64,000 nt of DNA, taken from contig NC_043003.1 in assembly GCF_006345805.1 (NCBI RefSeq), forward strand, positions 89,776,001 through 89,840,000, given 5' to 3'. The DNA is from Octopus sinensis (lineage: Eukaryota). Positions 1,540 to 51,792 of this stretch are shown piece after piece. The translations under genes and the position numbers were made by a program. Numbering within the stretch: position 1 is the stretch's first letter; every line of letters begins with the position of its first letter. Under the pieces are notes generated by a model. That model made no database searches. It saw only the letters and a list, made by a program, of their open reading frames with translations, and was not told the origin of the DNA.

Positions 1540-1643
1540 TTAACAAGCACTGGTAGCAACATAGATTCCTTTCTTCTGTTCAGCATCAATGGCTCGCTTG
1601 ATCTGCATGCACATCTCGGCTAAATTCCCCCCAGGAATGACAG
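1540..1643 (-). CDS. DLG5: Last coding exon of a DLG5-like MAGUK (C-terminus of guanylate-kinase domain)
   Basis: Minus strand has a long polypyrimidine tract ending tttctgtttttag, then (x)VIPGGNLAEMCMQIKRAIDAEQKKGIYVATSAC* (TAA at 1542-1540). This resembles the DLG5 C-terminus (human, recalled: GVIQGGALSSICTQILAMVNQEQNKVLWIP). Too short for the ORF track. Confidence 0.75.
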
Positions 1644-2275
1644 CTAAAAACAGAAACAGAAGGAAAAAAGAAAAGAAAAAAATGAGAAACAATTAATTTG
1701 TTACAGTTGAAAACAATTATTAGTACTTGAATGAACAGTAATTGTTACCATAACTGGATACACCAAACATAACTATTGTTAAACATGCCAACGTGCTATC
1801 CTTGTTATAGAGTGGCAAATATAAGGCAAAACAGTGTAATATCTCTAAGTATGACTGTAATGAATATTTACAAAGGTTCTGTGCAATTGGTACTTTTCAT
1901 ATTAAGAGGTGCCAGCTGATATTTCACCTAATTGGCTTATATCAGTGCCTAGTAATGAACAGATTTTGCTTAGACAGATCTCTGGTTTAGAGATAGATGA
2001 CTGAATGTTTGGAGGTAGTCCACAGATTTCGCAGCACGGGCAGACTATATTTCTATTTGTTTGTAACCATTAGTGTACTACACACTCTTATGTAGTGTTT
2101 AGACGTTGAGCAGCAGAGCAGCAATGAAACCATGTATCATCATTGTTATCCAGCTGTTTCTAATATCATATAAGAGCCTAATTATTTTGTTGTTTTTCCA
2201 GATTCAATCCTGATTGAAAAGACTTATACGATCAAAAACACTTCAACCTTAATTAACTAGTCTCCTTGTAGTCAT

Positions 2276-2860
2276 CGTCATCATCATCAGTTAATGTCCA
2301 TGTTCCATGCTAGCATGGGTTGGATGGTTTGACAGGATCTGAAAGATTCAAGATCTGCATCATGCTGTCTACTTTGGCATTGTTTCTATGGTTGGATGCC
2401 CTTCTTAACACCAATCACTTTAGTCTGTACTGGGCTCTTTTTTTCATGGCATCAGCACTAGTGAGGTTGCCATGCAGCTTGCAAGACTACAAACCTTGAG
2501 AGGTGGTTTTATGTTAGGACAAGATGAGAGGTATAAGTATGAAAGAAGGAAGTCAAAGTAGAAAAGGTTTCTTGCTGTAGAGGAGCTACATGGATACTTG
2601 CATTTTAAAAGAAACGATGAGGTGATGAGGAAGAGATAAAAAACAATAGCAATGAAGTGTCATGATATGAAGTGAGAGGGGAGAGAAGAACCAAGCAGTG
2701 TGGGTAGGTAGAGGTTGTAAGATTGTATAGAAGAATGATAAATTGTGAATGGATGAGGGGGTGAATATAATGAAATGAAGAACAAGTGTAGAGAGATGAT
2801 AAGTAGGGAAAAGTAGGTGATAATTGTATTTAGCAAACGTTATCTATGACCAATGTTCCC
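2276..2860 (-). mobile_element. Old non-autonomous element carrying an RTE 3' tail
   Basis: (CAT)n followed by ccatgctagcatgggttgga (reverse RTE tail). Body shared with 30822-31480 and 49250-49692 (tcttgctgtagaggag motif). Confidence 0.65.
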
Positions 2861-3240
2861 TGTAATTATTTGTTGTGGATATGCTCAGAAATTTGCAAAT
2901 TTTGTCTTTGTAAAATATGTGTGCATCTATGTGAGTAACCATCTTCAATTAAAAAATTTTATTTCACCTTGAAAACCTTATGTGCCTATATTTTTGTTCT
3001 TTGTGCACTAGTTGTAAAATATGTACATGCACACAGGCTCATGTTGTCTATGACTATATTATATACTATGTGCCTTTCCTCTTTAAAGATGCTAGGTTAT
3101 GATTTTAGAGAAATTTGGCTGTTATTTCAATTATGTACAACTTTCTCATTGACCCTGTTGATAAATGCAAGTAAAGTTTGTTTCTTTGGATTCATTTACA
3201 ATGATTATATTCAGGTGCACTCAGGCATAGTCATAGATAT

Positions 3241-4019
3241 GTCAGTAGCGGGGGCGGGTGTGCTGAAAGTGTAATTGCTAGAGTAAGAATAGCTTGGGCA
3301 AAGTTCAGAGAGCTCTTACCTCTGCTAGTGACAAAAGGCCTCTCGCTCAGAGTAAAAGGCAGACTGTATGACGCGTGTGTACGAACAGCCATGCTACATG
3401 GCAGTGAAACATGGGCCCTGACTGCTGAGGATATGCGTAAGCTCGCAAGAAATGAAGCCAGTATGCTCCGATGGATGTGTAATGTCAGTGTTCATACTCG
3501 ACAGAGTGTAAGTCCCTTGAGAGAAAAGCTGGGCCTAAGAAGCATCAGATGTGGTGTGCAAGAGAGACATTTGCGCTGGTATGGTCATGTGGCAAGAATG
3601 GATGAAGATAGTTGTGTGAAAAAGTGCCACACCCTAGCAGTTGAGGGAACCTGTGGAAGAGGCAGACCCAGAAAAACCAGGGACGAGGTGGTGAAGCACG
3701 ACCTTCGAACTTTAGGTCTCACTGAGGAAATGACTAGAGACCGAGACCTCTAGAAGTATGCTGTGCGTGAGAAGACCCGGCAGGAAAAGTGAGACCATAA
3801 CCCGTGGCCTTCTACACGAGATGTAGCCAGTCCACTTATGCATACCTTCCCTTCTTGGGACACAAAACTCTACTTGTGAAGACCTGTTGAGGCAAGTAAG
3901 AATCAGAATCGAAATCGATCAATGGAAATTGCAGCTGAGATACCAGTGGCGGTGGCACGTAAGAGAACCATCCGAACATGGGCGTCGCCAGCGGTGCCCC
4001 AACTGGCCTGTGCCGTGTG
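3241..4019 (+). mobile_element. 5'-truncated RTE LINE (RT C-terminus plus part of 3'UTR), cut by the gap
   Basis: ORF 3328-3753 (KGRLYDACVRTAMLHGSETW...LRWYGHV) matches the full-length copies. Confidence 0.95.
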
Positions 4020-4119
4020 NNNNNNNNNNNNNNNNNNNNNNNNNNNNNNNNNNNNNNNNNNNNNNNNNNNNNNNNNNNNNNNNNNNNNNNNNNNNNNNNN
4101 NNNNNNNNNNNNNNNNNNN
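4020..4119. other. Assembly gap of exactly 100 N
   Basis: 100 consecutive N, a conventional unknown-size scaffolding gap. Confidence 0.98.
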
Positions 4120-5190
4120 AATATTTTTGAACAAAGTAAATAATTTTTAAAACTTAAATAATAATTTTTTTAACCAAACGCGAACGGGGAAAATGTAGTG
4201 GCGAATTCGATTTACATACCTAAATTTTTTCTTTTTCATGACATTGTAGCAAAATAGTAGTGAATTATATAAATACCAGCAGTACATTTTTTTTTCTGGG
4301 GTATTTTTTTCAAACTCGTCACATATTTGCCCCTTTCAATTTAAACAAAGTCTTAATTAAGCAATTACGGCAGCTTAGCAATGGTTTCAATACAGGCCGA
4401 CATGTGTATCTCAATTGTTCAAAACCCTTCGAATTTTTTCGCACGTGATGATATCATAGTGAAAACTTTCAATTACGCGCGCTTAGAAGTACGCTCGCAT
4501 GAATAAAAAAAGTTCAGTTCTTTCTGTCTTTCACTCTGTCTGTCTCTTTACACACACTAACAAAAGCACTTCACTTACACACCACACTTTCTGTGTCGCA
4601 CAACCCATCAAACCACACACACAACACATACACACACACACACACACTCACGCACGCACACTGTACATCAATGCTTTCGGAGTGAAATGTTAAAATATTG
4701 AGTTTTCCCGAATTTTGTCTTAATTGGTGGTAAAATTGAAAGAAATTTTTTATGGCATCACCCACTGAAGTACTCTGAAAAATCATGGGTACACTCTAAT
4801 TGAAGAAATTGTGTGAGGAGTATCGTTATGTATTTATTTGTTTCTGTTTGCTGTGTTTTTTTATTTTTTGAGTAGTGGTTTAAATACTTTCAGTTTAGTC
4901 TTCCTCAAATCACTCTGTCACTATTTACTTTCATTTTATTCGTTGCACACTGTGTGTGTGCGTGTGGTGTAAACCACATTAAGAAAAGCATTTGACATAC
5001 ACACCAGAATGTGAGTTTTCTGTAAATTTTGCTTAATTGGAGTTTAAATTTTAAAAACTGGACCTAGCATGACCCGATGCATTCTACTCTTAAAAATGCT
5101 AGGTAAATTGTAATTGAAGAAATCCTATATTGTAGATTTCTATAACTTACAAAGGGAGGCAGATAAAATCTGCCTTTTATAATAAGAGAT
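4120..5190 (+). mobile_element. Possible Helentron-associated non-autonomous (HINE/DINE-like) element
   Basis: Internal (CA)n tract. Ends with hairpin AGGCAGA-taaaa-TCTGCCT then ttttataataagagat. Left boundary unknown (gap). Confidence 0.35.
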
Positions 5191-50590: not shown

Positions 50591-50596
50591 AATAAA
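50591..50596 (+). terminator. Candidate polyadenylation signal AATAAA
   Basis: First clear AATAAA downstream of the microsatellites following the 49869 stop; position only. Confidence 0.25.
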
Positions 50597-50647
50597 GTAA
50601 AAGAAAGCCCTGACAGGGATCTGTCGAATCTTGAAATAAACTAAAAC

Positions 50648-50768
50648 AGAGAGAGAGAGAGAGAGAGAGAGAGAGAGAGAGAGAGAGAGAGAGAGAGAGA
50701 GAGAGAGAGAGAGAGAGAGAGAGAGAGAGAGAGAGAGAGAGAGAGAGAGAGAGAGAGAGAGAGAGAGA
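50648..50768. repeat. Pure (GA)~60 tract
   Basis: Direct. Confidence 0.98.
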
Positions 50769-50827
50769 AGCATCTTGTTACACATGGGGATGTGTACATG
50801 AATAATCAAATTATAAGTGCGATGAAT

Positions 50828-50900
50828 GCCCCGCCCACTTCTCCAAATATGGTTGTAATAGGGCCAGAATCTTGTTGATGCCTTCACTTCAAGATGGCGA
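50828..50900 (+). promoter_or_regulatory. Candidate DLG5 promoter/TSS region
   Basis: GC box GCCCCGCCC (50828) and YY1-type AAGATGGCG (50891), ~610-680 bp upstream of the start codon. Confidence 0.45.
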
Positions 50901-51509
50901 CGCTGGAAAGAACGAAGGAAGTAACTTTGAAGAATTAGTTTCTAAACATCAGTTTCCTCGTCTCTGAGTCAAGTGTTATTTCTAATACAAAGACACTTAG
51001 ATAATGCTGAAAGTTGATGTCTCAGCATATCATAAAACGTTCCATTTTTTCAATTGATGCATATCCTATTTTTAAAACAACTTTATAAGTATAGTAAGTT
51101 TTTTCTTCCTCTTTCTTTTATTTTAGCAACTTTAATTAAGCTATTAACTCTTAGTAATTATCATTGATTCACTATTTCCTTTAATAGTGAACAACGTCTT
51201 TTCTTTGGTTGTCAAAGAAATAAATTCTCTCCAAATTAGTTATTTATGTTCTATAAATTAGAAAGAAAGAGAGAAAGAAGAGAAGAAAAGACTAAAAGAA
51301 TAAAAAGTTTGGATTTCCATCAACGAAGAATATGGCCGACGGTCTGAGACACTTTGGTTCCATTTGACACGTATGTGTCTTACATCGCTCTCTTCTCTCT
51401 TCGGTCGTTTCTCAATACTAGACAAGTTATACAAGGTTCTCTTATTGTGAAAGTTTGTGTAATTGGAATATTTTCTCTTAATGCAATCAACTATAATTGG
51501 CCATGAAAG

Positions 51510-51792
51510 ATGGATGAGAAGCATAAGGAACTCTTGGAATTACACAGGTCCAAATTTGTTCGGGCTATTGATGTTGATCGGATTTATTCTATTTTGAAAA
51601 GTGCCGATGTACTCAGTGATGATGACATTTCGACAATCAATAGTCAAACATCAAAGACGGCCAAAGTTGAAAAACTACTCGACATATTACCGTCCAAAGG
51701 AATGCTTGCTTTTCAGAACTTGTGTCATGCCCTGGAAACCACTTACCCTCATCTTTTGACTTTGATGTTCCTTGGTGGCAATCACAAAAACG
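51510..51792 (+). CDS. DLG5: First coding exon of DLG5-like gene (N-terminal CARD domain)
   Basis: 94 codons + 1 nt, in-frame TGA just upstream, donor G|GTAAGT at 51793. FQNLCHALETTYPHLLTLMFLGG resembles human DLG5 FQDLRAALEKTQPHLLPILYLNG (recalled). Confidence 0.8.

What the first reader, a model, noticed from the sequence alone, without database searches (positions are those of the whole stretch)
1540..51792. DLG5 tail (minus) and DLG5 head (plus) point away from each other across a 100-N gap
Seen: a DLG5-like last exon on the minus strand at 1540-1643, the DLG5-like CARD first exon on the plus strand at 51510, and a 100-N gap at 4020. I found no PDZ, SH3, GK or coiled-coil exon on the minus strand in the 49 kb between, although DLG5 is ~1900 aa with large exons. 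Inference: the contig starting at 4120 is probably flipped relative to the one ending at 4019, splitting one gene. Less likely are a real inversion or two divergent paralogues.
Basis: partly seen in the sequence, partly recalled or inferred. Interest (0 to 1): 0.7.

Follow-up and report, generated by a model that had tools for sequence, protein, structure and literature searches.

The report
Octopus DLG5 split by scaffold join
The first and last coding exons of one octopus DLG5 gene lie on opposite strands on either side of an assembly gap, most likely because the two joined pieces were wrongly oriented, so this is an assembly and annotation fault, not new biology.

Summary
Window 51510-51792 (+) is the CARD first coding exon of DLG5. 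It is 100% identical to residues 1-94 of the Octopus bimaculoides and O. sinensis DLG5 models. Window 1540-1643 (-) is a clean DLG5 terminal exon, with a polypyrimidine tract, an AG acceptor, 33 codons and TAA. It matches the last 35 positions of a DLG5 profile at E 3.5e-12. The only N run is 4020-4119. No other DLG5 exon lies on either strand.

New evidence supports one split gene. Every public Octopus DLG5 model stops at the exon boundary just before this tail. All other mollusc DLG5 proteins, and a cephalopod-like mRNA contig, continue with it. The splice phase fits, and no second Octopus DLG5 was found.

The left piece ends inside a repeated LINE copy. Nothing is continuous or in frame across the gap.

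My best reading (about 0.7) is a relative orientation or placement error at the join. The block concerned would have to be at least 220 kb. A real inversion (about 0.15) cannot be excluded from this window. The models of three species all lack the tail, which keeps that option open. The exon's intact, conserved sequence argues against an old inversion. Interest is low, except as a fix for the annotation.

The parts
1540..1643 (-). DLG5 terminal coding exon. It has 2 nt (CT) completing an Ala codon, then 33 codons, then TAA at 1542-1540. It encodes the last helix of the guanylate-kinase-like domain and the C-terminal strand.
   Evidence: profile E 3.5e-12 to the last 35 profile positions. Joined to the Octopus GK sequence it aligns colinearly with solved DLG1 GK structures 3W9Y and 3UAT up to their C-terminal region.
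1644..1675 (-). 3' splice acceptor: polypyrimidine tract CTTTTCTTTTTTCCTTCTGTTTCTGTTTTT followed by AG (1645-1644)
   Evidence: read directly
1..1539 (-). Presumed 3' UTR or downstream sequence of DLG5. ATTAAA motifs lie 19, 152, 1089 and 1461 nt after the stop. A (TG/TA)-rich simple repeat lies at about 830-1360.
   Evidence: Inferred, no transcript evidence.
1646..4019 (-). 2,374 nt of what would be the 3' end of the last DLG5 intron. It holds no coding exon.
3241..4019 (+). 3' part of an RTE-like LINE copy that runs up to the contig end, so the contig break lies in repeated sequence
   Evidence: 93.6% identity to 19327-18609, 85% to 12179-12951, and further copies
4020..4119 (.). 100-N assembly gap (scaffold join of unknown length). 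It is the only gap in the window.
4120..51509 (.). 47.4 kb of transposon- and repeat-rich sequence upstream of the CARD exon. It holds LINE copies, an LTR-element pol, a Tc1/mariner remnant, tandem arrays and a 2-kb (AT)n run. No host gene and no MAGUK exon was detected.
51510..51792 (+). DLG5 first coding exon (CARD domain, 94 codons plus 1 nt, phase 1), followed by the donor GTAAGT at 51793-51798
51793..64000 (+). The first 12.2 kb of intron 1 of DLG5. Exon 2 is not reached within the window.
   Evidence: the Octopus DLG5 proteins hit nothing else in the window..

Best explanation
The window holds the two ends of a single Octopus DLG5 gene. DLG5 is a MAGUK scaffold protein built as CARD, coiled coil, four PDZ domains, SH3 and a GK-like domain. 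The CARD first coding exon lies at 51510-51792 on the plus strand, and the gene body runs rightwards out of the window. That body spans about 173-186 kb in the annotated Octopus genomes. The true terminal exon, about 34 aa, lies at 1540-1643 on the minus strand, left of a 100-N scaffold join at 4020-4119.

The left piece ends 2.4 kb into what should be the last intron, inside a repeated LINE copy. The scaffolder most likely joined the two pieces in the wrong relative orientation or order. Turning the right-hand block, or moving and turning the left-hand piece, would put the tail exon downstream of the penultimate exon on the same strand and in the correct splice phase.

Shown: the identity of both exons, the absence of other exons, the lack of continuity at the gap, the truncation of all Octopus models at the matching boundary, and the phase fit. 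Inferred: that the arrangement is an assembly artefact and not the animal's real chromosome structure.
For: 1. The CARD exon is 100% identical to residues 1-94 of the O. bimaculoides and O. sinensis DLG5 models.
2. The tail is a DLG5 terminal exon (profile E 3.5e-12; 70% identity to P0160), with an intact acceptor and stop.
3. All five Octopus DLG5 models end at '...KIEHDYRH[L/F]IT'. After that they diverge: 'VL*', a 26-aa unrelated tail, the read-throughs 'GKTSSLHL*' and 'GETPSLLL*', or a partial end. Every other full-length mollusc DLG5 protein I fetched continues with '..A.I.GGNLAEM..Q[IV]K..I..EQ...*' (the partial P0007 stops short of it).
4. The read-through models show that the penultimate exon ends with a single G before GTAAG or GTGAG. 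The tail exon begins with CT, giving Ala, the residue relatives have there.
5. An intronless 6.6-kb mRNA contig (L001, P0160) of a cephalopod-like relative carries the tail directly after the GK sequence. Its nucleotides 6368-6437 match window 1638-1569 at 85.7%. In the conserved 25 codons there are 7 synonymous and 3 non-synonymous differences. This means purifying selection.
6. The hypothetical join aligns colinearly with solved DLG1 GK domains to their C-terminal end. So the tail supplies an integral structural element.
7. The only gap of the window lies between the two exons. The left contig ends in a multi-copy LINE and there is no continuity across the gap.
8. Only one DLG5 cluster was found for Octopus in the length ranges searched. 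No further exon was found on either strand.
Against: No reads, Hi-C data or second assembly could be inspected, so the orientation error is not demonstrated.

The block to be turned must be at least 220 kb: 47.4 kb upstream plus a 173-186 kb gene. That is larger than the pieces that scaffolders most often misorient.

Models from three Octopus assemblies made with different technologies all lack the tail. This is odd if only one assembly is wrong. It can be explained by a long, repeat-filled last intron defeating both assemblers and gene predictors, but that explanation is itself an inference.

A search for database proteins spanning the predicted junction, limited to lengths of 110-350 aa, found none.

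The source assembly of the window was not identified. Gap density argues only against O. bimaculoides v2, which has 713,915 contigs (PMC10700109).
Confidence: 0.7

Rival explanations
1. A real chromosomal inversion in the Octopus lineage. One breakpoint lies in the last DLG5 intron, at or near the LINE copy at the gap. The other lies at least 47 kb upstream of the CARD exon. The terminal exon is left stranded on the opposite strand, so Octopus DLG5 is made without its canonical last ~34 aa, or with substitute ends.
For: All Octopus DLG5 models from three species' assemblies lack the tail and end in different substitute sequences. A repeated LINE sits at the presumed breakpoint and could mediate non-allelic recombination. 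Megabase-scale inversions between Octopus genomes are reported (PMC10700109).
Against: The stranded exon is fully intact: acceptor, frame and stop. It keeps the invariant core GGNLAEMCMQIK..I.AEQKK identical to a gastropod (P0162). Differences from a distant relative are mostly synonymous in the core. That is not expected after the 34 My or more implied by an inversion shared with O. bimaculoides (divergence time from PMC10700109).

The tail forms the end of the GK fold, so its loss should be costly. The donor site of the penultimate exon is still GTAAG or GTGAG in two species. The presumed breakpoint also coincides with the only assembly gap in 64 kb.
Confidence: 0.15
2. There are two DLG5-like genes. 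The plus-strand gene starts at 51510. A separate minus-strand paralogue has its last exon at 1540-1643 and its other exons more than 62 kb away, beyond the window.
For: This cannot be strictly excluded, because the window ends at 64000 and octopus introns are long. Exon 2 of the plus-strand gene is itself more than 12 kb from exon 1.
Against: No minus-strand DLG5 exon lies anywhere in 1644-64000. Only one Octopus DLG5 cluster was found in two searches of 5.8 billion proteins, limited to lengths of about 1,050-3,600 aa. The known Octopus gene lacks exactly this exon and fits it in phase. A paralogue would also need a last intron of more than 62 kb that encloses the other gene's promoter and first exon on the opposite strand.
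Confidence: 0.05
3. The tail exon here is a duplicated genomic fragment, either an uncollapsed haplotig or a segmental copy, inserted near the 5' end of DLG5. The functional copy lies unannotated downstream of the gene.
For: Hi-C scaffolders do place small haplotigs near their allelic locus. The left piece ends in a repeat.
Against: If a normal copy lay downstream in cis, at least one of the five Octopus models should have used it, and none does. It is not a processed copy, because intron-like polypyrimidine sequence precedes it, not GK coding sequence.
Confidence: 0.07

Closest known systems
Octopus DLG5 gene models: XP_014776830.2 (O. bimaculoides), XP_029638654.1 (O. sinensis), CAI9726174.1 (O. 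vulgaris)
   Same: The first 94 aa of the O. bimaculoides and O. sinensis models are identical to the window's CARD exon. The gene spans 173-186 kb in those two, as expected for a gene that leaves the window after exon 1. The O. vulgaris model lacks the CARD exon and spans 110.6 kb.
   Different: None of the models contains the window's tail exon. They stop at '...DYRH[L/F]IT' and add unrelated or read-through residues.
Complete mollusc DLG5 proteins (e.g. Sinanodonta P0153, Argopecten P0152, Physella P0162) and the cephalopod-like mRNA contig L001/P0160 (SRR27666064)
   Same: The CARD is 56-68% identical. The C-terminal tail has the same length, position and core motif GGNLAEMC.QIK..I..EQKK, and is contiguous with the GK domain in mRNA.
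   Different: In those sequences the tail follows the GK domain in one transcript. In this window it lies on the opposite strand, about 50 kb upstream of the first coding exon.
MAGUK SH3-GK modules with solved structures (DLG1 3W9Y and 3UAT, PSD-95 1KJW, ZO-1 3SHW)
   Same: The Octopus GK sequence joined to the window tail aligns end to end with them (E 1e-20 to 1e-11). The tail lies on the last GK helix and the following C-terminal segment. From the published PSD-95 SH3-GK structures, as I recall them, that segment forms the final strand completing the SH3 fold.
   Different: DLG5 additionally has an N-terminal CARD and a long coiled coil. No DLG5 GK structure was among the matches.
Orientation or placement errors at scaffold joins of unknown length (100-N gaps) in Hi-C-scaffolded assemblies
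   Same: A gene's exons appear inverted relative to each other exactly across a 100-N join. The contig ends in a multi-copy repeat.
   Different: The misoriented block would be unusually large, at least 220 kb. The error itself is not demonstrated here.
CARD-coiled-coil / CARMA proteins (CARD9, CARD11)
   Same: A CARD domain lies at the N-terminus. The CARD exon hits CARD9 and CARD11 structures at E about 3e-3. CARMA proteins are also MAGUKs.
   Different: The best full-length matches are all DLG5, and the exon is identical to the annotated Octopus DLG5.

Membership tests
DLG5 (discs large homologue 5, MAGUK) | N-terminal CARD domain as the first coding exon | tested here: met
   Pfam CARD E 1.4e-13. 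100% identity to residues 1-94 of the Octopus DLG5 models. Profile E 3.5e-45 at positions 1-94.
DLG5 (discs large homologue 5, MAGUK) | C-terminal end of the GK-like domain with the DLG5-type tail (..GGNLAEMC.QIK..I..EQKK..[WY]V..) | tested here: met
   Profile E 3.5e-12 at the last 35 profile positions. 70% identity to P0160. Colinear with DLG1 GK structures when joined to the Octopus GK.
DLG5 (discs large homologue 5, MAGUK) | Coiled coil, four PDZ domains, SH3 and the GK core between head and tail | tested here: not met
   None of these exons is in the window on either strand. PDZ domains (and a weak GK hit in two of the three) are recorded for the annotated Octopus proteins, whose genes extend 173-186 kb (O. 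bimaculoides, O. sinensis) beyond the CARD exon, and the coiled-coil and GK sequence is visible in them. So they lie outside the window and are not missing from the gene.
DLG5 (discs large homologue 5, MAGUK) | Head and tail belong to one transcript (same strand, colinear) | tested here: not met
   In the sequence as assembled they are on opposite strands and point away from each other across the gap. Phase compatibility and the truncated models argue that they belong together. Octopus transcript evidence was not available: the junction-probe search found nothing.
Assembly misjoin / misorientation at a scaffold gap | The discordance coincides with a gap, and no sequence continuity supports the join | tested here: met
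   The single 100-N run lies between the two exons. The left flank is a multi-copy LINE fragment running to the contig edge. The right flank is unrelated.
Assembly misjoin / misorientation at a scaffold gap | Reads, Hi-C or independent assemblies support the alternative orientation | not testable with these tools
   No reads or Hi-C data are available. The DNA of the three annotated Octopus loci was not returned because the gene ranges exceed 100 kb.
CARD-CC / CARMA (CARD9-11, 14) | The CARD is most similar to CARD9/11-type CARDs and is followed by a CARMA-type architecture | tested here: not met
   The top full-length matches of the CARD exon are DLG5 proteins of 1,500-2,100 aa at 55-62% identity. 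CARD9 and CARD11 structures score only E about 3e-3.

The most novel reading that the evidence does not exclude
The arrangement is real. An inversion in the Octopus lineage cut DLG5 in its last intron. Octopus DLG5 would then either be made without the conserved final GK helix and closing strand (with substitute C-termini, as annotated), or regain it by an unusual route such as trans-splicing from the stranded exon, which stays under selection.
Probability: 0.12. Interest if true: 0.55.

Novelty: not a real feature. Interest (0 to 1): 0.15.

Why it matters
This matters mainly for genome curation. It pinpoints a probable orientation or placement error at one scaffold join in an Octopus chromosome-scale assembly.

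It also identifies the missing terminal exon of DLG5. All public Octopus DLG5 models are C-terminally truncated by about 34 residues, and those residues complete the GK-like domain. Anyone using these models for MAGUK evolution or for cell-polarity, Hippo-pathway or synapse-scaffold studies in cephalopods would inherit a wrong C-terminus.

If the arrangement were instead real, it would be an unusual case of a conserved scaffold protein losing, or trans-acquiring, an integral structural element.

Tried and rejected
- The tail alone against Pfam and PDB gave no meaningful hit, because 33 aa is too short. Its identity came only from DLG5 homologues and a DLG5 profile.
- The CARD exon as a CARMA, CARD9 or RAIDD gene was rejected, because the exon is identical to Octopus DLG5.
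- A junction probe (166 aa of Octopus GK plus the window tail, scored over its last 70 residues) was searched against 5.8 billion proteins of 110-350 aa to find Octopus transcript-derived fragments spanning the junction. There were no hits.
- The full-length composite, scored on its last 200 residues, found many complete mollusc DLG5 proteins but no Octopus protein with the tail.
- I tried to fetch the genomic loci of the three Octopus DLG5 models. The gene ranges of 110-186 kb are too long, so no DNA came back, and no neighbouring genes lie within 10 kb.
- I tried to identify the source assembly by exact look-up of eight window-encoded open frames. None is in the collection.
- A paper search for the SRA run of the mRNA contig found nothing.
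- The O. bimaculoides chromosome paper gives only 'HiC integrated with the published shotgun assembly' (PMC9068888). Contig counts in PMC10700109 make O. bimaculoides v2 an unlikely source of a 64-kb window with a single gap.
- I looked for host genes between tail and head and found only transposon-derived frames.
- The processed-pseudogene reading of the tail was rejected, because intron sequence precedes it, not GK coding sequence.

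
Full report
**What is in the sequence**

On the minus strand, a 30-nt polypyrimidine tract and an AG (1645-1644) precede an exon at 1643-1540. After two bases (CT), it reads VIPGGNLAEMCMQIKRAIDAEQKKGIYVATSAC and stops at TAA 1542-1540.

On the plus strand, an ATG at 51510 opens a 94-codon exon that ends at 51792 before GTAAGT.

**Identity of the two exons**

The plus-strand exon is a CARD domain (Pfam PF00619, E 1.4e-13). An exhaustive HMMER search of 1.84 billion representative proteins was run with it. The full-length proteins among the best matches have 1,500-2,100 residues, and their N-termini are 55-62% identical to it. 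Named relatives are 'disks large homolog 5'. The exon is 100% identical to residues 1-94 of O. bimaculoides XP_014776830.2 and O. sinensis XP_029638654.1. The window therefore comes from an Octopus genome.

The minus-strand exon is too short for Pfam or PDB on its own. It does match the extreme C-termini of DLG5 proteins:

- tblastn gives E 1e-5 to P0008.
- tblastn gives E 1.8e-8 and 70% identity to P0160.
- A profile of 13 DLG5 proteins gives E 3.5e-12 to the last 35 profile positions.

**Nothing else of DLG5 is in the window**

Three searches looked for further exons: tblastn with eight homologues, tblastn with the Octopus DLG5 proteins themselves, and an unfiltered profile search of all 2,575 six-frame pieces of at least 15 aa. 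They found only these two exons on either strand.

The 47.4 kb between the gap and the CARD exon is filled with transposon remnants and repeats: RTE-like LINEs, an LTR-element pol, a Tc1/mariner remnant, tandem arrays and a 2-kb (AT)n run. No host gene was recognisable. Exon 2 of DLG5 is not reached in the 12.2 kb after the CARD exon.

**The gap**

As the scan's note asked, I tested continuity first.

- The last ~780 nt of the left piece (3241-4019) are a copy of the 3' part of an RTE-like LINE.
- That LINE has at least six other copies in the window. The closest is 93.6% identical, and the match runs to within 2 nt of the contig edge.
- The first ~1,050 nt right of the gap match nothing else in the window in either orientation.
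- No exon or open frame abuts the gap.

The contig therefore broke in a multi-copy repeat, and the join rests on scaffolding evidence that cannot be seen here. A run of exactly 100 N is the conventional placeholder for a gap of unknown length (general knowledge of AGP and scaffolder conventions).

**Evidence that head and tail are one gene**

The five Octopus DLG5 sequences in the protein collection come from O. bimaculoides v1 and v2, O. sinensis and O. vulgaris. All stop at the same point, '...FQKIEHDYRH(L/F)IT', and then diverge:

- 'VL*'
- 'GVKILGTYRPTVVMMCIGFVRSLHSL*'
- 'GETPSLLL*'
- 'GKTSSLHL*'
- nothing, in a model that simply stops at ...HLIT with no further residues

Every other full-length mollusc DLG5 I fetched continues at that point with the tail found in the window, for example '...DYRHLFSATIQGGNLAEMCQQIKNVINAEQAKAVWVA...' in Sinanodonta.

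The read-through endings 'G-K-T' and 'G-E-T' spell G|GTAAGAC and G|GTGAGAC. So the penultimate exon ends with one extra G before an intact donor. The window's tail exon starts with CT. Together they give GCT (Ala), the residue relatives have there, and the frame then runs to the stop.

A 6,572-nt intronless contig from a public RNA run (L001, SRR27666064) encodes P0160, which is 56% identical to Octopus DLG5 overall. It carries the tail directly after the GK sequence. Its nucleotides 6368-6437 match window 1638-1569 at 85.7%. Within the 25 conserved codons there are 7 synonymous and 3 non-synonymous differences.

The Octopus GK sequence joined to the window tail aligns colinearly with solved DLG1, PSD-95 and ZO-1 GK modules up to their C-terminal region. 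From the published PSD-95 SH3-GK structures, as I recall them, that segment is the last GK helix plus the strand that completes the SH3 fold. I did not verify this with a fold comparison.

Only one Octopus DLG5 cluster turned up in two searches of 5.8 billion proteins, limited to lengths of about 1,050-3,600 aa.

**Artefact or biology**

As assembled, the tail lies about 50 kb upstream of the first coding exon on the opposite strand, so it cannot be spliced in cis.

The simplest account is that the two pieces joined at 4020-4119 have the wrong relative orientation or order. Turning the right block would bring the penultimate exon next to the gap, on the minus strand, upstream of the tail. Moving and turning the left piece would do the same.

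Points in favour of an artefact:

- The discordance coincides with the only gap.
- The break lies in a repeat.
- The exon is intact and still selected.
- The tail has a structural role.

Points against:

- The right block must hold 47.4 kb plus a gene body of 173-186 kb. That makes it at least 220 kb, which is large for a scaffolder's orientation error.
- Models from three assemblies built with different technologies all lack the tail. This could mean the exon is out of reach in all of them.

Contig numbers in PMC10700109 bear on the source. O. bimaculoides v2 has 713,915 contigs, O. sinensis 20,491 and O. vulgaris 2,758. A 64-kb window with a single gap is therefore unlikely to come from O. 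bimaculoides v2. In the other two assemblies, gaps are rare (by my estimate from those counts, one per several hundred kb or more). That makes a chance coincidence of a gap with a real breakpoint less likely, although breakpoints and gaps both favour repeats.

An inversion old enough to be shared with O. bimaculoides would date back 34 My (PMC10700109). It would be expected to have eroded a stranded 104-nt exon, yet the 17 core residues are still identical to those of a gastropod.

I put the assembly error at about 0.7, a real inversion at about 0.15, and a duplicated fragment or paralogue at about 0.1 together.

**What could not be done**

- The DNA of the annotated Octopus loci was not returned, because the gene ranges exceed 100 kb.
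- No Octopus transcript fragment spanning the junction was found among proteins of 110-350 aa.
- The source assembly could not be identified by exact look-up of window frames.
- Reads and Hi-C data are outside these tools.

**Verdict**

The cause is probably a scaffolding error but is unproven.

As biology this is ordinary. Its practical value is a flagged misjoin and the recovery of the terminal DLG5 exon that all public Octopus models lack.

Noticed in passing
window 1540-1643 (-), compared with P0154-P0158: All public Octopus DLG5 protein models (O. bimaculoides v1 and v2, O. sinensis, O. vulgaris) are truncated at the same exon boundary. They carry unrelated or intron read-through C-termini. 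The O. vulgaris model also lacks the CARD exon.
   Followed up: yes
window 9600-12950 (+), 21974-18600 (-), 3241-4019 (+), 27858-28395 (-), 41300-42500 (+), 45889-47240 (+): This is a family of RTE-like LINE copies: endonuclease PF14529, RVT_1, then a PHD/C1-like zinc finger. Two copies are near full length with frames broken by stops. One fragment forms the contig end at the gap.
   Followed up: partly
window 13193-15112: Tandem arrays with 63/125-bp and 172-bp units follow the 3' end of the LINE copy. They are related to the sequence at the gap edge (3900-4019) and to 42.5-43.8 kb and 47.2-47.7 kb.
   Followed up: partly
window 15673-17636 (also 5202-5848, 17844-18180): Very long imperfect (AT)n/(TA)n tracts. 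The largest is about 2 kb and drops G+C to 14% in that 2-kb bin.
   Followed up: no
window 36387-38633 (+): A 749-codon open frame (633 aa from the first ATG) has no Pfam or PDB match. It lies between LTR-element pol fragments and is probably transposon-derived, but it remains unidentified.
   Followed up: partly
window 44684-45675 (+): A Tc1/mariner-like transposase remnant (HTH domains and a weak, sub-threshold match to the end of a DDE_3 domain) is split over three frames.
   Followed up: partly
window 34017-34663 (+): LTR-retroelement pol fragments (RVT_1, RT_RNaseH_2).
   Followed up: no
L001 (Logan SRR27666064 contig 27440), 59-6469: A complete intronless DLG5 mRNA of 2,136 aa from an unidentified relative. 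It is 56% identical to Octopus DLG5, and its CARD is 68% identical to the window. It is useful as a full-length cephalopod-like reference with the canonical tail.
   Followed up: partly
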